From: Trichoplax adhaerens
Taxonomy: Eukaryota; Animalia; Placozoa
Assembly (NCBI RefSeq): GCF_000150275.1
Contig: NW_002060944.1
Location: 6,299,102 to 6,363,101, forward strand
Reading direction: 5' to 3'
DNA: 64,000 nt
Shown: piece by piece, positions 19,301 through 63,212 of the stretch
Layout: each line of letters starts with the position of its first letter
How positions within the stretch are numbered: position 1 is the first letter of the stretch
Made by a program: the position numbers and the translations under genes
The notes under the pieces: generated by a model
Database searches by the model: none
Seen by the model: only the letters and a program-made list of their open reading frames with translations
Told to the model about the DNA's origin: nothing

Positions 19301-20858
19301 AAGCTTTCAGTCATTATCCTCTTCTTGACTACGAACCTTTCTAACTTGCATTGATTAGAGGCTGAAAACACCGTTACCTTTATCTACTTTAGGTATGCAT
19401 TATAATAGTGATTACAAGAGGATTGTTAATCAATAATAATATCCATGATAATTAAAATAATAAAGAGCTTCTTTATATTTAACTGATGACTATAGTGTCT
19501 TTGTACGAGTAATGTGGTCAATAATATTTTTGCCTTCCGAGCATTGCGCAAGCTACATATACGAATACGTCTTTTAATACATTGCTGTCTTTATCAGAAG
19601 GATCATGTTAGGAAAAACCTAATAATCGATGAAGTTAATGACGTTACACGATAGTCGCAATAATCAATGTAATAAGAAAATAAAACAGCTAAACTACTGG
19701 ACAGTTAGAATTATACTATTGTGCCGTTTGATCAATTTTTCACTCGTCACGGCCATTTTTAATATACATGGTATAACATACGCGTAAAGAAGAGTTAATG
19801 ATGGAAAGCTGAGTTGAATTATACCCACGAAATTTATTTGTGTGATATCTTGTTACTCATAGCTATAGTATTTGTAGAAACACCCACTCTGACATATTAA
19901 ATCAAAATGGTAGCATGGGACTGATTACCGTATGGAATTTTACCATCTGTTTGTCAATAAAGTATATTAGCTTACTGCTGATCAGTCATTCTTCCATTTT
20001 TTTATAGTTTTTATATCATTTTCGCTACTTTGAGAAGTCATGTATGCGCCCTATGATAGGCATTACATCTTGATAACCCTATTCATTATTCCATGACCCT
20101 CAGTTCAAAATAATAACCAGTTGTGTTTATGCTGTATGCAATATTTTCTTTAGTCATTCCATATTTTTCTTGCATAACAATATAATACTTGTTTTCAATT
20201 ACGTACACATCGTAGAGACGTAAACGCTTTTAATTCATTAATTGCTATTGTTATGTAAATGTCATAATTGCATATATCAAGATAGATGTAGGTATGTCTG
20301 TATAACTAATAGTAATAACATAATCAAAAAACATGTTTTCCATCGACAGTCCTAACATACTATGAGGGCATTGATACGGAATAGTTCGTAATATCTATGA
20401 AATAAACAAAACAACCTTTTATTGACCTTAACTGGTGTAGTTATAGACCTTGTGTAACTGGATATGATCATCATTCTGTCAGGCGATTGCCGTCATTAAC
20501 TCATACCTACTCTTAACAAAATTATTATACGTATACCCAATATCCCCAACAGTACCTATCGATATTAAGATTGGAAAAAAATCTTCTTCTCAACTATCCA
20601 CAAAAAAATCATCCAATTTCAACTTGTTATTAGGTAACCCTATATTACATTAAAAAAATAATAAAAATAACGTTCAATTAAAGTATTTAATGCTAACTAT
20701 AAAATATGATCAAAAGTGTAAAAATTTTTGATTCCAATTATATTCATAATGTTAAATAGACTTTAAGTTCAAATTGTTGTTCAAACTAATCTACAAACTC
20801 TCTTTATCTTTCACCGTATACGCATTGATATCCATTAGCAGTATAGTTAAAATATCAG

Positions 20859-20886
20859 TATATATATATATATATATGTATATATG
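20859..20886. repeat. (TA)n microsatellite about 370 bp upstream of zinc-finger gene A
   Basis: A TA dinucleotide run with one G interruption, read directly from the sequence. Confidence 0.85.
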
Positions 20887-21247
20887 AGGACAACGATATT
20901 CATAAATAACTTTATTTCTTTCATGTGATTAAATTAGGTAGTGTTCGCACGCTGCTTATGTATCCACTCGGTGAAATCAGCTAATACTAATTATTTGGAG
21001 CATCATTGGCAATCGATTGCGAATATTATTAAATTACGAAATTCTTAATCTTGAATCTACTAATATCACATTGAGAATATTAATTACAGTGAGTATTAAA
21101 AAAACTATAAGAATTCTCGTCTTTTATGACATATCAATACAATATCGCCATTCATTAAAGACAGAAATTCAGTCAATTAATATTAAGAAGATTGAGACAT
21201 AATTTGATCCAACCTCTTGAAGCTTCGGGTAATCCTCTCTAACAAAT

Positions 21248-22810
21248 ATGACGGAAAGTAAAGAAGATAACACTAGTACCATATACGATATTTTTAATCG
21301 ATCAACTAGTGTTTGGAAACAAATATCGGAAATAGCAAGCAATAGCCGTAATGAATTACCTATACAACCAAGCGTGGCTATGGATTTATTAGAAAAATGC
21401 GCGAGAGAACTTGCGCGGATTGAGCCAATCCCTTCATCCGATACCGACGACGATGAAGCTGAAAATCAAAAACAACAAGAATTCTCAACGACAGAGATAT
21501 TATCCAATGTATCATTTTGGTCATCGCAAATGCTAAAAGTTATTTATAACAAGCAACTTTTACCTACTAATTTGTTGTCGCAACTAACCACCATACTATT
21601 TGGATGTATTCTGCATTCATTACGATTACTGAAAGGTGATTCGTCTACACACAACCTATTGCGGCAAATTCTTACGACGATGGCACCGTCGGATACATCT
21701 AACGATAGTATTGACGAAGACGAAGATATTGAATCCAACGACGATTTTGTAAAAAATGAAACATTTCCTACCGATTCATCATCCGTTGATGACAGTGATA
21801 GCCATAGCCAATCAAGCTTAATTGCTCCAACTGATAGCACTATTTCAAATCCAACACAATCTAACGGAAACAGTGTAAGCCATTCTAACGTCACTAATTT
21901 TAGTGTCAATTGTATCCTAAGCAATAACAGAAACACTGATGTCAAGAACCACGAGGAGTTACCAGTTGAGAAAATGAATGTTGCGGCTTGTTCGATGAAT
22001 AAAGATCAAGATCATTCAGTTAAGGAAACGTTTACCATAAATCGCGGTGTACCACTTCATCCCAATAATGTTTCATGCAATCCTGTTATTTCACCTGTTT
22101 TTATTTACGATATTACACCTGCTGGACCTCGTATTATTCCAGTACCTCAACAACAAGCTATGCCACCAACTGCTGTAGCATATACCAATTTCGGCAATAA
22201 TGTCAATGATCGCATTAACACAGTTAAACCGGTCGTCAATCCTTATCAGGGTGGCTATAATGATAACCCGCCGTTATTTTTCAAGAACAGAAATTTAGCA
22301 TCACCTAATCGTAATGCATTAAATCACGATGGACAATTTAACTATTACGATAATCATGGAGATGGCAGCAATCAAGATGGACCTTATCGATGTGATATCT
22401 GCTACAAAGCCTTTGGTCGCTCATATAGTCTAACAAGACATAAGAGGATACATACTGGCGAGAAACCCTATCGATGCGACGTTTGCCATAAATCATTCAC
22501 TCAGTCCTTTCATTTAAAAATGCATAAACGTACGCATTCGCGCGATGTTTTATATTCGTGCGATATCTGTGGAAAAAGTTTTATCCAAGCAAATGATTTA
22601 AAGAAACATCGAAGAGTTCATACCGGCGAAAAACCATACGTATGCATGATATGCCTAAAGCCTTTTACCGATTCCAGCCAGTTAAAACGTCATATTCGAG
22701 TTCATACTGGAGAAAAGCCATACACATGCGACATTTGCAATAAATCGTTTTCGCAATCTGGTACGTTGGCAAAACATAAAAAAATCCATCTTAGAAACGC
22801 GGAGCAGTAA
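21248..22810 (+). CDS. Zinc-finger gene A: 520 aa; N-terminal helical domain, eh1 motif and five C-terminal C2H2 fingers (putative transcriptional repressor)
   Basis: Single long ORF with 5 CxxC-x12-HxxxH fingers and TGEKPY linkers, except the ZF2-3 linker, which is SRDVLY. eh1-like FSVNCIL at 21899-21919. Confidence 0.92.
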   Translation: MTESKEDNTSTIYDIFNRSTSVWKQISEIASNSRNELPIQPSVAMDLLEKCARELARIEPIPSSDTDDDEAENQKQQEFSTTEILSNVSFWSSQMLKVIYNKQLLPTNLLSQLTTILFGCILHSLRLLKGDSSTHNLLRQILTTMAPSDTSNDSIDEDEDIESNDDFVKNETFPTDSSSVDDSDSHSQSSLIAPTDSTISNPTQSNGNSVSHSNVTNFSVNCILSNNRNTDVKNHEELPVEKMNVAACSMNKDQDHSVKETFTINRGVPLHPNNVSCNPVISPVFIYDITPAGPRIIPVPQQQAMPPTAVAYTNFGNNVNDRINTVKPVVNPYQGGYNDNPPLFFKNRNLASPNRNALNHDGQFNYYDNHGDGSNQDGPYRCDICYKAFGRSYSLTRHKRIHTGEKPYRCDVCHKSFTQSFHLKMHKRTHSRDVLYSCDICGKSFIQANDLKKHRRVHTGEKPYVCMICLKPFTDSSQLKRHIRVHTGEKPYTCDICNKSFSQSGTLAKHKKIHLRNAEQ

Positions 22811-25499
22811 ATTACAATCTAGATACTTCAATTAATTATTATGAAATAATTGCATACTGTTATAATTAAATCGATTGATTCATTACTTATAACATCAGCG
22901 AGAAAAGTATCAGAAGCCAATCTCTTATGTATTACTAAAACTGAAATGTATCTCAAGTGGTTTTCAGATTTAATTTTCAGTACGTTCAATTCAGTTTTTT
23001 GACTTGGCATACAATACGCCAAACATGACCAAATGTTGGTATTAATTGTAATCTTAACAATTATTCAGTATGTTATCAGTAATGTCTTACTCTTAACATT
23101 TGCAACTCTCATGTAGCAATAATTATTAGCACTCTAGTATCTTATATAAATCAATCTTCAAATAATTAGACTCTTAAAACTTGGTATGCTATAAAATAAT
23201 CATCACAATGGTATTAGCTGTAACAATGTGAATAATAATAGGATGATTAGTTTATAGTGGTACTCTAGTCTAAGGTTAGAACCATTTAGAGTTATACATG
23301 TAGTAAAGTCTATAAATGTAATCTTTTATTATACAATTTTCTGTCACGCCTACGAGAATTTAAAGTTAATACTTTTTGCCACGACTGCAAAATTGAATTA
23401 CTTGATGTTTTGCATACAAAAATTTTATTAGACAGCATTTTAAATATTCGTCCTATCTATTTTTGTTTGTAATTCAAGCTGCTATAATCATAAATATTAG
23501 AATATAAATTGGTACCTATTTAACGCATGGTACATTTTATTTTAAAATAGTTATATCAATGTTACTTGGTATTTTATTGATATTGTTGTGATACAATAAC
23601 ACTAAACTATATCACCTCCCAGGAATGATGTCTTCCTTAACCGGTAATGGAAATCGTCCCTTTTATTATCTGTTTATCGCTTATAAATTTGTACTACAGT
23701 ATACAGTATATATATATATACATATATACATGTAAACGTTAATAATTAATGATATATAAATTTATCAATTGAGCACCGATGTTCATAGGCGAATTGCAAT
23801 TTTAAAACATTTCAGCATTTTTGTGGGTTATTTGAAGGCTTTATTTAAAGTATAATCCGCATTTATACTACCATACTACATGAAGATGCAACGGCATCAT
23901 TTTATTTACTTAAATGATGGAATGTATTCTGTTAATAAATTTAAATGATGTCTAAAATGAAGTGTAGCTTACCGAAAATGGATTGACTACTGTATTGGAA
24001 TAATTGTACGGACTAATGTTGCACGAATAAGGTTATTCTTCTATTTATTAGCCATCGGATAAATTGAAACTTAAAAATTTTTTTTACTTAAGCTTTTATG
24101 CCAAGCAGAGATGCCTGATAGCAATACATTTCATTCGTCCCCGAACCTTTACAATTTGCTATTAATCTTTCTACTTCAAATTGCGTAGAATGATTAAACT
24201 CTTGGGTAATAAAAATTCATTTGAACTTTATAGGCTGGCTAATTTGATATAATTTATTGTAAGTCTTGTCTAAAATTTAGTATCATTCATGATTTGAATA
24301 ACAATCAGAGTTCAGTAATGTAATTAAGTCCAATCATATTGTTAATATGCATGTATTGATATATTCAAATCAGCCTATCTACATTAATGAGTATTTGAAA
24401 GTTCTGCTTACTAGGGTTATAATTAATTATTGTACATTAAATTAATTTTAAAGTAGCTTATTGATTCGTTCCGTTCTATTAACATCAGCTACTACGCAAG
24501 CTATCAATCATCGGTTTATCTCTCGTAAGGTCTCATAGCTATCAACAAATTAGAGTATTAAATTATATCTACTTACCGTATGTGCAACTTCTGAATTCTT
24601 AAGGAAATTGTAACAGATAAATAATTTCTGACAGTCAAAAGTTAGTAGCTGACAACTAACATCATATCTTGTTTTCTCTCAGTCTTCTAAGAAATCTTAC
24701 ATGAACATAAATTGAAAACTTTTAGGTTCTATAGAGATATAGTAAATAAAAATGTGAATAAAGATCATAACATGATTGTATTCCATAAAAATATGAACAG
24801 TTCCAAATAAGTACTACAAACAAAAGCAACGTATGTTTCTAGCCAATAACTAAGATAGGAGGATATGCATATTAACGTTCCGGATTAATAATAAAAGTAT
24901 TAAACGTCAGTCATGAAATCGTAATTATACTAATTATGTTTTCAATTTCATCTAAAAATTATATAACAAAAAATTTACATATCACTGTCAATCTTACTGC
25001 TGCAACACGTATAGTTATATTATTAGAAGTTTGAATGGTAATCATGCTCATTAACTTACAATCAACGAATAAAAAGAAATGATAACAAAACATAATGCAT
25101 TACACTCAATATGCCCTCGAAGTTCAGATTAAAATATGATATTTGGTTAAACTACACAGCCTAATCCACAGTATATTACACTTTTTATGTAATATATACT
25201 TACTGGTACTGCATAACTATCTCATAAGGTAACAATTAAGAAAATTTTTTGACTTTCATCTTCATCGTCTTAATGGTCGTAGTAAACATGCCATAAATAT
25301 TTCATGTTGTTTACTGGATGCAACGTTGAATTTTGTGACTCAACGCTGAAATATATGCTCTAAACTATAGTATTTTTATTTTAAATTTTATAAGGTGAAC
25401 ACATTAATAATGAATCAAGACAATAGCGTAGGAATAATTGATCCCTAATGTAAAATAATGCGAACATGCATTGTTTTGATGATTTAGGCAATGATTAGA

Positions 25500-34584: not shown

Positions 34585-36261
34585 ATGGCAGGAGGTATGG
34601 AGGAAGCTGTTGACATGATCCAGGCGATTAAGTCAAGCAGTACGCCATCAGAATCCTATCAACGTTTTCATCAATTTGTTCAATGGTTGATTAAGACTAT
34701 AGAAGATCACAGATTGGCCAATTCCAATATTGAAAAACTAGTCTTGATGCTACATGAACTGGCTCGAGAGTTAACCAATTATCGCTTAACGTTACCGCAT
34801 GCAGTCGCTGAAGGCCAACGCGGCGACATACACGTAATTTTATATAATATGACATGCTGGTGTATTCAATTAATTAACGCTCTAAAAGAGAATTGTTCTA
34901 CAGACAAGTTAAATTTCATATTAGAAGCCACTACCCAAGCAGCGTTGGTTTATGCTGGACTAATTACTATTGCAGCATCGGGTAGTAATAGCAGCAATAT
35001 CATCGGGCCTAGCCTTGATAACACTTCTGACGTTGACAAAGATATCAACATAGACAATTGTCAGAGTGCTTCACGGCCTGCCGTTTCGGCACAAGGTATC
35101 GACGATAGCAACATCGCTAGCAAAAGTGGAAATTCTAGTCCAAGTCAATACGAACCTCATCAAAGCCGCACCATCGCCAATAAATATTCTAACCTTGGCC
35201 AAAAAGAGCTTACTAGCAAAACCCTTGAATCGACGACGTTAAAAGAGAGCGAGGTCAATGTCACACAACCATCATGCGAGAAAGAGAAGAAGTCTCGAAA
35301 ATCTGTTGAGGAAGACACCACCACCATAGTCAGTACAAATACGCGATCTGATGATGACAACAGCCAACGATCCAAACGTGCATTAAAATCAAGTAAACGT
35401 GGTAATGATCGATTTGAAGTCCGAGAACGAACGAGCATCAAAACTTCCAGTAAGAAAAGCAATTTTTCTGTTAGTTACTTATTAAGCACTGCTTCTAATA
35501 AACAACGAAGTAATGTCAGTACAGGTAGCAAAAACAATTCTCCTTCAGATGAAGATAGAGTTACAAGATCGGATACTCTACTCCGCACTACAAACGTCAT
35601 GAGATTAAACACTCCTCGTGCAGTTCTACCCGGCAATAGCAACACTACACAACCATCCACCTTTATTAATCGGCCCTTACTAACTTATCATCCATCACAA
35701 CATCCGATGATAGTAAATGCGTCTAATAACAACGGACATCAAGCGCCAGTCTATTTGGCCGGCCCAAAAGTTGAAGGATTATATTACTACATGCAAACGC
35801 CAGTGGTGACATCAATTACCGGTCATACCAACATAAATACTCCAATTACCCCAAGCAGGGGTGAAATTCGTCCAGACCAAGCGAGCACAAGCAGCCAACA
35901 TCATACTCCACGTGAGGAAGAGTTACGTGGAAATTTCTTTACTAGTAACAAAGTATCGACGTTCGACGACAAGGACTATCTTCGTAAAGAAATTTCCAGT
36001 CCAGAATCGAGCTCCGCAATAACTGGACTTCGTGCTGGCGATCCACAGTCTAATGAAAGTAGAACTGGCAAATTATACCAGTGTGAAGTTTGTACAAAAA
36101 CCTTTGGCCGCGCTTATTCACTAACTCGTCATAGACGTATCCACACTGGCGAGAAACCCTACCATTGCGTCGTTTGTGGCAAATCATTCACCCAATCGTA
36201 TCATTTAAAGATCCATATGAAAACCCATAGTCGTGATCGACATCGATCAAGGGAGGTTTAA
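34585..36261 (+). CDS. Zinc-finger gene B: ~558 aa; N-terminal helical domain, eh1 motif and only two C2H2 fingers
   Basis: Single ORF (first ATG 34585; alternative ATG 34597). eh1-like FSVSYLL at 35464-35484. Fingers [49 protein letters not shown], then [10 protein letters not shown] and stop. Confidence 0.9.
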
Positions 36262-50241: not shown

Positions 50242-51837
50242 TTATGGATTTTCGGCATCTCTTGAATGAATTCTGAAGTGGATTTTAAGATGATAACTCT
50301 GAGAAAAGGATTTTCCACACGTTGAACACTTGTAGGGCCTTTCACGAGTATGGATTCTTTTATGACGCGTTAAACTGTAGGATCGTGTGAAAACCTTAAG
50401 ACATATATTACAGCGGTACGTTTTATTGCTTGTGCTACTTGCCAATTGAAAATATGGGAAACTTTCTTGAGTATGACGAACTTGTACGGGTGCGTATACC
50501 GGAGCAGGAAAAATATTTGGCAATTGATAGCAGTATGTGACAGGTAGCATATTTACTGCAAACTGCTGCGTGGCAATGGTATCAGAGGGAGCTGATGATG
50601 CTATTTGAGATGGGACAGATGATGCAAGGTTACCTTCAGCACTAACCTGTGTGTAATTCACATTATGCGCAACATTCCTGGCTAATGGATTTGACCCTCC
50701 TACATTTGATGACAAGACTGTTTTATAATTACTTAAATTGGTATCATTTGAAATTTTAATTGTTGTTCCTTGTGACGAATCTCGTGCACTTTCAACATCA
50801 CTACCAATGGATGTGGTTGAACTTTCGAGTAATTCATTACTAGCATTTAATAATGTTGCTTCAGTTTCATCTGTAGGCGAGCTTAAGATACGTTTTACAG
50901 AAAAGCTGATCTTAGTGTTAGTCTTAGTAGTATTCATAGTTAATGTAGTATCCTTGTCTAAGTTCAAGCATAAAGTGTTACGATTGTTGATTCTGGATGA
51001 TCGTTTCTGCTTTTCAAATGTACCTTCTGCTACCAATTGATTACTCCCAGATCGAGACGTGGTTAAAATTGCTACAGAGTCAATGTCGCTGCTATCGCTA
51101 GAAGATTCTCTAAATGATCCTTGGCGATGTTGTCTCTTATCGAGTCCTGAAGTAGGTAGTGAAGAAGTAATAGCTGCATTTTTTGCAGTTGGCAGCTCCA
51201 TGTCGTCTCTGCTACAGCCTGCTACTGGACTATCACCTCTTAACAACGCAGACACGTTGCGGCTGGTTGTAATCTCACTATCATTGCTATCTTGCTTGAT
51301 AATATTGCTTACGCATTTGTCACGGTTATTGCGTATGAAAGATGGAGTTAGGTTATCGTCTGATTGTGGAGTTCCAGATTGATTTCCGTCCCTTTCCAAA
51401 GGTTTATCGTTATAATAGATGTATCCCTTATTAGTCGACGATATACTGGTATGTCTTCGGAATTGGTGCAATTCTAATATAATTGCAGCATAAACAGCGA
51501 TCATATTGGTACAATAAGAGGGCAATGATAAATCTTCGTCGGCGGAGTTGAAAATTTTGTGTAGAAATTCCGTCAACCAAAATGTCATCTGGGATATAAT
51601 TTCATCTATAGCAAAATTAGTTTTGCCAGTATCAAATACTGTTGACTTTTTTGATGCCGGATGAACAGGCAAATCTCCAAGCATTTCCCAAATAATTTTA
51701 AGATGAGACTTAGATAATTGCCCATAGCTAGCTGTATTATCTCTGATAACTTGAAGCAATTTGCAAAATAATTTACTGATTGTGTATTGATCTCCACCTA
51801 TTTTAATCTGTCGCAGTATATTGACTATATTTTCCAT
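50242..51837 (-). CDS. Zinc-finger gene C: 531 aa; N-terminal helical domain, eh1 motif and only two C2H2 fingers
   Basis: Single ORF. eh1-like FSVKRIL at 50904-50884. Fingers [49 protein letters not shown], then SRDAENP and stop. Confidence 0.9.
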   Translation of the reverse strand: MENIVNILRQIKIGGDQYTISKLFCKLLQVIRDNTASYGQLSKSHLKIIWEMLGDLPVHPASKKSTVFDTGKTNFAIDEIISQMTFWLTEFLHKIFNSADEDLSLPSYCTNMIAVYAAIILELHQFRRHTSISSTNKGYIYYNDKPLERDGNQSGTPQSDDNLTPSFIRNNRDKCVSNIIKQDSNDSEITTSRNVSALLRGDSPVAGCSRDDMELPTAKNAAITSSLPTSGLDKRQHRQGSFRESSSDSSDIDSVAILTTSRSGSNQLVAEGTFEKQKRSSRINNRNTLCLNLDKDTTLTMNTTKTNTKISFSVKRILSSPTDETEATLLNASNELLESSTTSIGSDVESARDSSQGTTIKISNDTNLSNYKTVLSSNVGGSNPLARNVAHNVNYTQVSAEGNLASSVPSQIASSAPSDTIATQQFAVNMLPVTYCYQLPNIFPAPVYAPVQVRHTQESFPYFQLASSTSNKTYRCNICLKVFTRSYSLTRHKRIHTRERPYKCSTCGKSFSQSYHLKIHFRIHSRDAENP

Positions 51838-62210: not shown

Positions 62211-63212
62211 CTAATTCGTGGCATTTCTATGTATTATTTTATGCTTAGTTAAAGCTCCCGACTGAGTAAATGATTTACCGCACACTAAACACTTATACGG
62301 CTTCTCTCCGGAATGAATTCGTTCATGTTTTCTTAGTTGACTGGAGTCTGTAAATCGTTTACCGCAATCAGAACATGAATACGGCTTTTCACCTGAGTGT
62401 ATCCTATAATGCTTTTTCAGGTCATTGGCTTGCACGAATCTTTTGTTGCAAACATCACATTTATGTCTCAGATCTCCAGTATGAATTCTTCTATGGATAG
62501 TCAAATGATAAGGTTGGGTGAAAGCTTTTGTGCAAATATCACACTTGTAAGGTCTTTCACCAGTATGAATCCTCATATGACGAGTTAGGCAGTGATAACG
62601 ATCAAAAGCTTTATTGCAGATTTTACAATAATGAGTTCCAGTAATATTAGTACCAGAACTACGGGTACCAAGGCGTTTGGTAATACTATCGTCTGACCAT
62701 GTTTTGTCGTTTACAGGCTTGTCATTGTCAGAAATTTTTGTAGCAGTCACCGGTTGGATAACTGGCGAAGCAGTTTCTTTATGATGTTCAACAGGGTTCA
62801 CGGGATTGGCAATAATGGCACCTGGTGACGCAGGCATGTACATTCGATTGCAAAAGAGGTAGTCAAACGGTAAACAACCAAAATATCCTGACATACCTAA
62901 CTTGAAATTAACACCAAAGGTATTCATTAACGGCTGGATGGCAAAATTCTTTTGAGGATATTGGTGGCAAAGATTACCACCTCCTTGATATTTTATCAGT
63001 GTTTTATCGTGAACACTACCCAAATTATGAAGGATTCGATCGACAGAAAATGGCAATGGACTAACTGCTTTACTAGCATCTGATTTAACCGCTACGTGAT
63101 TGGGTTTACCGGTGCTTTCCAAGCCATCTCGATAGTGAGAGTTCTCATGAAGAGCTCCGATTGCCGCATTATAATTGCTGAGAAAAGTGGGTCCCATGTA
63201 ACTTCCTGCCAT
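62211..63212 (-). CDS. Zinc-finger gene D: 333 aa; eh1 motif near the N terminus and five C2H2 fingers. It lacks the helical domain of A/B/C in this ORF, and the 5' end may be spliced
   Basis: PLPFSVDRIL (eh1, 63050-63030). Five fingers collinear with gene A (RYHCLTRH, QPYHLTIH, QANDLKKH, DSSQLRKH, QSGALTKH). Confidence 0.9.
   Translation of the reverse strand: MAGSYMGPTFLSNYNAAIGALHENSHYRDGLESTGKPNHVAVKSDASKAVSPLPFSVDRILHNLGSVHDKTLIKYQGGGNLCHQYPQKNFAIQPLMNTFGVNFKLGMSGYFGCLPFDYLFCNRMYMPASPGAIIANPVNPVEHHKETASPVIQPVTATKISDNDKPVNDKTWSDDSITKRLGTRSSGTNITGTHYCKICNKAFDRYHCLTRHMRIHTGERPYKCDICTKAFTQPYHLTIHRRIHTGDLRHKCDVCNKRFVQANDLKKHYRIHSGEKPYSCSDCGKRFTDSSQLRKHERIHSGEKPYKCLVCGKSFTQSGALTKHKIIHRNATN

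What the first reader, a model, noticed from the sequence alone, without database searches (positions are those of the whole stretch)
21248..21640. Unrecognised ~120-aa N-terminal helical domain shared by genes A, B and C
Seen: the N termini of A (21248-~21640), B (~34597-34980) and C (51837-~51455) are amphipathic and ordered-looking, and align on a Trp-centred motif: EILSNVSFWSSQMLKVI / [17 protein letters not shown] / EIISQMTFWLTEFLHKI. The motif is preceded by LLEKCARELA / [10 protein letters not shown] / IIWEMLGDLP and followed by TILFGCIL / ALVYAGLI / IAVYAAII. Known: expanded C2H2 families carry lineage-restricted N-terminal effector or dimerisation modules (KRAB, SCAN, ZAD, BTB). This one lacks ZAD cysteine spacing and the KRAB, SCAN and BTB signatures as I recall them. 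Inference: a previously undescribed zinc-finger-associated helical-bundle domain, possibly mediating A/B/C heterodimerisation.
Basis: partly seen in the sequence, partly recalled or inferred. Interest (0 to 1): 0.85.

Follow-up and report, generated by a model that had tools for sequence, protein, structure and literature searches.

The report
Placozoan-only helical domain on zinc-finger repressors
Three of four neighbouring Trichoplax zinc-finger repressor genes begin with a roughly 125-residue, five-helix domain that is conserved among placozoans but matches no known domain family or specific fold. It is a real, small, lineage-restricted domain, and its function (perhaps partner binding) is untested.

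Summary
The window is Trichoplax (Placozoa). It carries four tandem intronless C2H2 genes: A, B and C, plus a fourth gene, D. All four have an eh1-like FSVxxIL motif.

**Similarity.** A-C and B-C similarity is beyond chance. A-B is linked only through C.

**Evidence for a real domain:**
- In two diverged placozoan orthologues of B, this region is 83-86% identical, against 47-66% in the linkers.
- AlphaFold gives the same five-helix layout for B and C, at moderate confidence.

**No known relative found:**
- Pfam gives nothing at E<=10.
- A profile search of 1.84 billion proteins finds only placozoan copies.
- PDB sequence and fold searches return only generic or designed helical bundles.
- The species' own genome holds exactly three copies, and D lacks the region.

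The reading "undescribed zinc-finger-associated helical domain" is therefore supported. The dimerisation idea remains pure inference, because the one complex prediction gave no verdict. Expression was not shown.

This is a modest, lineage-restricted orphan domain.

The parts
21248..21646 (+). Gene A N-terminal helical domain (residues 1-133). It lacks the first short helix of B and C and has an acidic insertion (SSDTDDDEAENQKQQE) in the helix 3-4 loop. The Trp motif EILSNVSFWSSQMLKVI is at 21494-21544.
   Evidence: Translation; alignment A3; A-C SW z=7.1; HMM tests.
34597..34980 (+). Gene B N-terminal helical domain (residues 1-128, counted from the ATG at 34597). An in-frame ATG at 34585 is used by the Trichoplax sp. 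H2 gene model. The Trp motif [17 protein letters not shown] is at 34834-34884.
   Evidence: AlphaFold model m75bee013007a: pLDDT 71.7, pTM 0.66, helices 2-12, 17-36, 42-65, 74-97 and 102-128. It is 83-86% identical to the diverged orthologues P0008 and P0003, against 47-66% in the linkers.
51448..51837 (-). Gene C N-terminal helical domain (residues 1-130). The Trp motif EIISQMTFWLTEFLHKI is at 51553-51603.
   Evidence: AlphaFold model m863aec2ac419: pLDDT 68.5, pTM 0.57, helices 2-13, 17-37, 43-54, 73-97 and 107-129.
21899..21919 (+). Gene A eh1-like motif FSVNCIL, lying between the N-domain and the fingers.
   Evidence: aligned with the B, C and D motifs in the full-length alignment.
35464..35484 (+). 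Gene B eh1-like motif FSVSYLL.
   Evidence: 13 of 13 residues around it are identical in both diverged orthologues.
50884..50904 (-). Gene C eh1-like motif FSVKRIL.
22385..22789 (+). Gene A: five C2H2 zinc fingers.
   Evidence: Pfam zf-C2H2 E=1.9e-30 with 5 stretches.
36076..36228 (+). Gene B: two C2H2 zinc fingers. The ORF ends shortly after finger 2.
   Evidence: Pfam; no downstream finger 3-5 coding sequence in the window; the same short C-terminal end occurs in the orthologues.
50266..50418 (-). Gene C: two C2H2 zinc fingers. The ORF ends shortly after finger 2.
   Evidence: Pfam.
62211..63212 (-). Gene D, the comparator: a 333-aa paralogue with eh1 FSVDRIL (63030-63050) and five fingers (62229-62633), but no N-terminal helical domain.
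   Evidence: The own-genome profile search finds only A, B and C. D residues 1-50 show no significant similarity to the domain, and the sequence upstream is full of stops.

Best explanation
A, B and C are tandem paralogues of a placozoan eh1-plus-C2H2 repressor family. Each begins with a homologous domain of about 125-130 residues made of five alpha-helices, inherited from their common ancestor. The domain is followed by a long disordered linker that carries an eh1 (Groucho-binding-type) motif, and then by two or five C2H2 fingers. Shown: the domain is under stronger constraint than the linkers, is restricted to placozoans as far as sequence searches can see, and has no detectable relationship to KRAB, SCAN, BTB, ZAD or any Pfam or PDB family. 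Inferred: it acts as a protein-protein interaction module on a DNA-binding repressor. Its most likely role is self- or cross-association, which would let the two-finger proteins B and C bind DNA as pairs or pair with five-finger A. I put the structural and evolutionary part at about 0.8 and the self/cross-association mechanism at about 0.3-0.35.
Against: A-B similarity is not significant on its own. AlphaFold confidence is only moderate, and the alignments are very shallow (3-4 rows). The agreement in helix layout is not statistically discriminating, because both models are mostly helix (0.70 against a control mean of 0.63; 16 of 121 shifts reach it), and the 3D models could not be superposed. 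Diverged orthologues were found for B only, so constraint on the A and C domains is not shown. Nothing supports binding: the homodimer prediction gave no verdict. Transcription of the region was not demonstrated, since contigs from RNA-labelled runs also cover the flanks. The argument from finger number rests on four genes.
Confidence: 0.6

Rival explanations
1. The region is conserved but is not an autonomous folded domain. On this view it is a set of amphipathic helices or short linear motifs that become ordered only on binding a partner such as a co-repressor or an import/export factor, so 'helical bundle' over-reads a moderate-confidence model.
For: pLDDT is only 68-72, no residue reaches 90, and the helix 3-4 loop is below 50. 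The ESM Atlas recognition scores are low (1409 and 1529), and B has no usable hit. Structure searches find only generic bundles.
Against: Conservation is continuous across about 128 residues rather than confined to short islands. Hydrophobic content is typical of a folded core. pTM of 0.57-0.66 points to a defined packing. Residues invariant among A, B and C are mostly buried types (I, L, W).
Confidence: 0.2
2. It is a very divergent member of an already described helical family, for example a HEAT/ARM-like hairpin unit or a SCAN-like or other zinc-finger-associated module. The relationship would be beyond the reach of HMMER and of fold search on a moderate-confidence model.
For: The C domain's nearest ESM Atlas clusters are all HEAT/ARM/TPR-like helical proteins, scoring 0.89-0.94. 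The tools warn that a missing fold match does not show novelty. No profile-profile search against Pfam or PDB70 was available.
Against: The ESM hits are scattered over unrelated families, recognition is low, and B does not reproduce them. Pfam gives nothing at E<=10. No SCAN, BTB or KRAB structure appears in the top 50 rows listed by any of the four fold searches.
Confidence: 0.12
3. The similarity is chance or composition, or the N-terminal part is not really coding (a mis-called start or a 5' UTR).
For: A-B is not significant, and the pairwise identities are only 17-24%.
Against: A-C and B-C exceed all or nearly all shuffles. The ORFs are continuous from these starts to the fingers, with stops 5-23 codons upstream. 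An independently called Logan protein (P0008) starts at the same Met and is 85% identical over the first 40 residues. The H2 annotations have the same lengths.
Confidence: 0.03

Closest known systems
SCAN domain (PF02023) of vertebrate C2H2 proteins
   Same: An N-terminal, all-helical module of about 85-125 residues on C2H2 zinc-finger proteins, restricted to one lineage. SCAN is a dimerisation domain (general knowledge), which is the role guessed here.
   Different: There is no sequence match at E<=10, and no SCAN structure appears among the listed fold matches. The taxon is different (Placozoa). The H2 protein name 'Zinc finger and SCAN domain-containing protein 22' is not backed by any SCAN hit here.
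ZAD (PF07776), KRAB (PF01352) and BTB/POZ (PF00651) modules of expanded C2H2 families
   Same: Lineage-restricted N-terminal accessory domains, joined to the finger arrays by a disordered linker, that serve dimerisation or co-repressor recruitment (general knowledge).
   Different: There are no Pfam matches. No cysteine is conserved among A, B and C, so a ZAD-type zinc site is excluded. The fold is all-helical rather than the alpha/beta fold of BTB. The family has only three members and is not expanded.
eh1-bearing C2H2 repressors of bilaterians (C. elegans ces-1; Drosophila odd and bowl; Fez family)
   Same: An FxIxxIL-type eh1 motif combined with C2H2 fingers. In those proteins it goes with Groucho-dependent repression (PMC1310626). 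Trichoplax has a Groucho orthologue (PMC4943189).
   Different: No N-terminal helical domain is described for those families in the text I read (PMC1310626, searched by terms only). Orthology of A-D to any of them was not tested. Groucho binding was not tested here.

Membership tests
SCAN domain (PF02023) | Match to the SCAN profile | tested here: not met
   hmmscan against Pfam-A: no SCAN hit at E<=1 on the full proteins, and 0 families at E<=10 on the isolated N-domains.
SCAN domain (PF02023) | SCAN-type helical fold | tested here: inconclusive
   No SCAN entry appears in the top rows of Foldseek or VIA for either model. The models are of moderate confidence, and the tools state that a missing match does not show that folds differ.
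ZAD (PF07776) | Four zinc-coordinating cysteines in two pairs, and a profile match | tested here: not met
   No cysteine column is conserved among A, B and C, and there is no Pfam hit.
KRAB (PF01352) | Match to the KRAB A/B box profile | tested here: not met
   No Pfam hit at E<=10.
BTB/POZ (PF00651) | Profile match and an alpha/beta BTB fold | tested here: not met
   No Pfam hit. Both models are all-helical with no strands.
eh1-C2H2 Groucho-dependent repressors (context of the domain) | An eh1 motif FxIxxIL conserved outside otherwise divergent sequence | tested here: met
   FSVNCIL, FSVSYLL, FSVKRIL and FSVDRIL align in A-D within unalignable linkers. 13 of 13 residues are identical in the B orthologues.
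eh1-C2H2 Groucho-dependent repressors (context of the domain) | Physical binding to Groucho/TLE and repressor activity | not testable with these tools
   This needs pull-down and reporter assays.
Dimerising zinc-finger-associated domains (functional class) | Self- or cross-association of the isolated domain | tested here: inconclusive
   Complex prediction on two copies of the B N-domain scored 0.00-0.01 with the verdict 'no answer'. This counts neither for nor against binding.

The most novel reading that the evidence does not exclude
The domain is a placozoan invention that works as a homo- and hetero-oligomerisation module. It would let the two-finger paralogues B and C pair with each other or with five-finger A, producing composite DNA specificities or dominant-negative regulation within one tandem cluster of Groucho-type repressors. 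That would be an independent, non-bilaterian origin of the SCAN/ZAD/BTB strategy.
Probability: 0.25. Interest if true: 0.55.

Novelty: new variant of a known kind. Interest (0 to 1): 0.35.

Why it matters
Lineage-restricted N-terminal modules such as KRAB, SCAN, ZAD and BTB govern how C2H2 factors pair up and recruit co-repressors, and nearly all described examples come from bilaterians. A separate, unrelated helical module on eh1-C2H2 repressors in Placozoa would show the same design arising in one of the earliest-branching animal lineages. It would also give a compact test case: three genes with five or two fingers, plus a natural domain-less control, D. The family is tiny, its function is unknown and no interaction is shown, so the present value is that of a well-supported orphan domain rather than a surprise.

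Tried and rejected
- **Complex prediction (B N-domain, two copies):** verdict 'no answer', score 0.01, controls not run. It counts neither for nor against binding.
- **The listing of cluster members:** this query could not be made because the shared database was switched off.
- **Orthologue searches for A and C N-domains:** only the 99%-identical Trichoplax sp. H2 proteins were found, so constraint is shown for B only.
- **Representative-library hits P0004-P0006:** these are long internal-repeat proteins matched in 5-10 stretches, and I rejected them as false positives.
- **ESM Atlas:** C gives scattered HEAT/ARM-like clusters at low recognition, and B gives no usable hit. I treat this as 'generic helical' and not as a lead.
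- **Fold searches:** only generic or designed bundles and membrane four-helix bundles came back.
- **Read laying on 20600-23400:** contigs from RNA-labelled runs cover the gene and both flanks with no joints. This is compatible with an intronless gene but does not show transcription. The 'organism C' run held only a 269-base, near-identical finger fragment.
- **Vestige of the domain in D:** D residues 1-50 are not similar beyond chance (564-1812 of 2000 shuffles reach the score), and the sequence upstream is full of stops.
- **Secondary-structure agreement statistic:** not discriminating.
- **Downstream finger 3-5 exons for B and C:** none in the window.

Full report
**What is there.** The window is a piece of a Trichoplax (Placozoa) genome: contig C1413 of a 105.6-Mb assembly. 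Gene C is 99% identical to a Trichoplax sp. H2 protein, and A and B match H2 proteins likewise.

Four long intronless ORFs encode paralogous C2H2 proteins:

| Gene | Coordinates | Length | Fingers | N-terminal domain |
|---|---|---|---|---|
| A | 21248-22810 + | 520 aa | five | yes |
| B | 34597-36261 + | 554 aa from this ATG | two | yes |
| C | 50242-51837 - | 531 aa | two | yes |
| D | 62211-63212 - | 333 aa | five | no |

The H2 annotations have the same lengths (531, 520 and 557 aa), which supports the single-exon models. All four proteins carry an eh1-like motif between otherwise unalignable linker sequence: FSVNCIL, FSVSYLL, FSVKRIL and FSVDRIL.

**Checking the observation.**
- The three N-termini align collinearly, with the Trp at residue 91, 88 and 87.
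- Smith-Waterman scores against 1000 shuffles give A-C z=7.1 (0/1000), B-C z=3.2 (8/1000, collinear from residue 1 to about 120) and A-B z=0.5.
- Small family HMMs against 300 shuffles give A-C E=8e-6 (0/300), B-C E=4e-4 (0/300) and a B+C profile against A E=7e-5 (0/300). An A+C profile against B is reached by 4/300, and A-B direct by 30/300.
- hhalign gives P=0.002 (A-C), 0.0035 (B-C, 118 columns) and 0.2 (A-B, right register).

The three-way relationship is therefore real, but it runs through C. Since the genes are tandem paralogues with the same order of parts, common descent of these N-termini is also the expected reading.

**Is it a domain?** Three lines of evidence say yes.
- *Composition.* Hydrophobic content is 0.4-0.6 in the first 120-130 residues and 0.13-0.3 in the linker that follows.
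- *Constraint.* Two diverged orthologues of B were found. P0008 (Logan, 544 aa) starts at the same Met. P0003 (ENA, 504 aa) has a gene model that starts at internal Met51. The table gives identities by region; the Fisher p compares the N-domain with the two linkers pooled.

| Pair | N-domain | Linker 1 | eh1 | Linker 2 | Fingers | Fisher p |
|---|---|---|---|---|---|---|
| B vs P0008 | 83% | 50% | 13/13 | 66% | 93% | 3.7e-7 |
| B vs P0003 | 86% | 47% | 13/13 | 59% | 96% | 7.5e-8 |
| P0008 vs P0003 | 96% | 73% | 13/13 | 84% | 96% | 1e-4 |

Helices 4-5 around the Trp are the most conserved part, at about 90% in 20-residue windows.
- *Structure prediction.*
  - C's N-domain has pLDDT 68.5 and pTM 0.57, with helices 2-13, 17-37, 43-54, 73-97 and 107-129.
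  - B's N-domain has pLDDT 71.7 and pTM 0.66, with helices 2-12, 17-36, 42-65, 74-97 and 102-128.
  - The order of helices and the places of loops agree in the alignment register. The agreement statistic is not discriminating, because both models are mostly helix.
  - The 3D models could not be superposed with the tools at hand.
  - A lacks the first short helix and has an acidic insertion in the helix 3-4 loop.

**Is it known?** I found no relative outside placozoans.
- Pfam-A gives no family on the N-terminal parts at E<=1 in the full proteins, and none at E<=10 on the isolated domains. KRAB, SCAN, BTB and ZAD are therefore tested and not met.
- No cysteine is conserved among the three, which excludes a ZAD-type zinc site.
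- An exhaustive HMMER profile search of 1.84 billion representative proteins returned five hits. Two are placozoan (the A and B families). Three are long internal-repeat proteins matched in many stretches, which I reject.
- A profile search of PDB sequences hit only de novo designed helical proteins and a tektin at weak E-values.
- Foldseek against the PDB gave a best E of 0.45 for C and 0.64 for B.
- The ESM Atlas gave scattered HEAT/ARM-like clusters for C at low recognition and nothing usable for B.
- In the organism's own genome, a six-frame profile search finds exactly three copies.
- D has no vestige of the domain, and the sequence upstream of it is closed by stops.

**How it most likely works.** The shown part is the architecture: a folded-looking helical N-domain, a long disordered linker with an eh1 motif, and then C2H2 fingers. 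The rest is inferred.
- *Repression.* The eh1 motif marks Groucho-dependent repressors in bilaterians (PMC1310626), and Trichoplax has a Groucho orthologue (PMC4943189). A-D are therefore most simply read as DNA-binding repressors.
- *Role of the N-domain.* By analogy with SCAN, ZAD and BTB, the N-domain is most likely a protein-protein interaction module. Self- or cross-association is the most economical guess.
- *Why association is the best guess.*
  - B and C keep only two fingers, which would recognise a short site.
  - Both retain the domain.
  - B's truncated end ([10 protein letters not shown]-) is conserved in diverged lineages, so the two-finger state is old and functional.
  - The only paralogue without the domain has all five fingers.
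- *How strong this is.* It is a correlation over four genes, not a test. The one complex prediction (two copies of B's domain) returned 'no answer' and counts neither way.

I put the structural and evolutionary claim at about 0.8 and the association mechanism at about 0.3-0.35.

**Limits.**
- Diverged orthologues were found only for B.
No DNA of the orthologues, no dN/dS and no synteny analysis were therefore possible.
- The AlphaFold alignments had only 3-4 rows.
- Expression was not shown. Contigs from RNA-labelled runs cover gene A and both flanks without joints, which is compatible with an intronless gene but not evidence of transcription.
- No profile-profile search against Pfam or PDB70 was available.

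**Novelty and verdict.**
- The finding is real: a placozoan-restricted, apparently undescribed helical domain on three eh1-C2H2 paralogues.
- Paper searches found no description of it.
- The kind of thing, a lineage-restricted accessory domain on zinc-finger factors, is well known, so I rate it a new variant of a known kind with modest interest.
- The scan had not found this domain before on other DNA.

Noticed in passing
window 21899-21919 (+), 35464-35484 (+), 50884-50904 (-), 63030-63050 (-): All four paralogues combine an eh1-like FSVxxIL motif with C2H2 fingers, and 13/13 residues at the motif are conserved in the B orthologues. Copley 2016 (PMC4943189) reports finding no EH1-C2H2 association in the non-bilaterians it examined, so this cluster appears to be a counter-example.
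   Followed up: partly
window 36229-36261 (+) and 50242-50265 (-): B and C both end a few residues after finger 2, following a shared HSRD. No finger 3-5 coding sequence lies downstream in the window. B's short tail ([10 protein letters not shown]-) is conserved in two diverged placozoan orthologues, so the two-finger form is old and maintained and is not a recent pseudogene.
   Followed up: partly
window 35650-36060 (+), gene B linker 2: Several short islands in B's second linker are conserved among the three B orthologues: [33 protein letters not shown] and [14 protein letters not shown]. These may be further linear motifs. An APVY-like stretch also recurs in A and C.
   Followed up: no
P0001, P0002 (Trichoplax sp. 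H2 orthologues of C and A): The public name 'Zinc finger and SCAN domain-containing protein 22' looks like a name transferred from a finger-region match. No SCAN domain is detectable in these proteins.
   Followed up: yes
P0003 (ENA-derived orthologue of B): Its gene model starts at the Met that corresponds to B residue 51, which cuts off the first two helices of the domain. The Logan-derived P0008 has the full N-terminus.
   Followed up: partly
window 21247-22068: In one RNA-labelled run (X6), a contig starts at 21247, one base before A's ATG, with higher word depth (594) than the neighbouring contigs (135-317). Contigs cannot show transcript starts or levels, so I leave this uninterpreted.
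   Followed up: no
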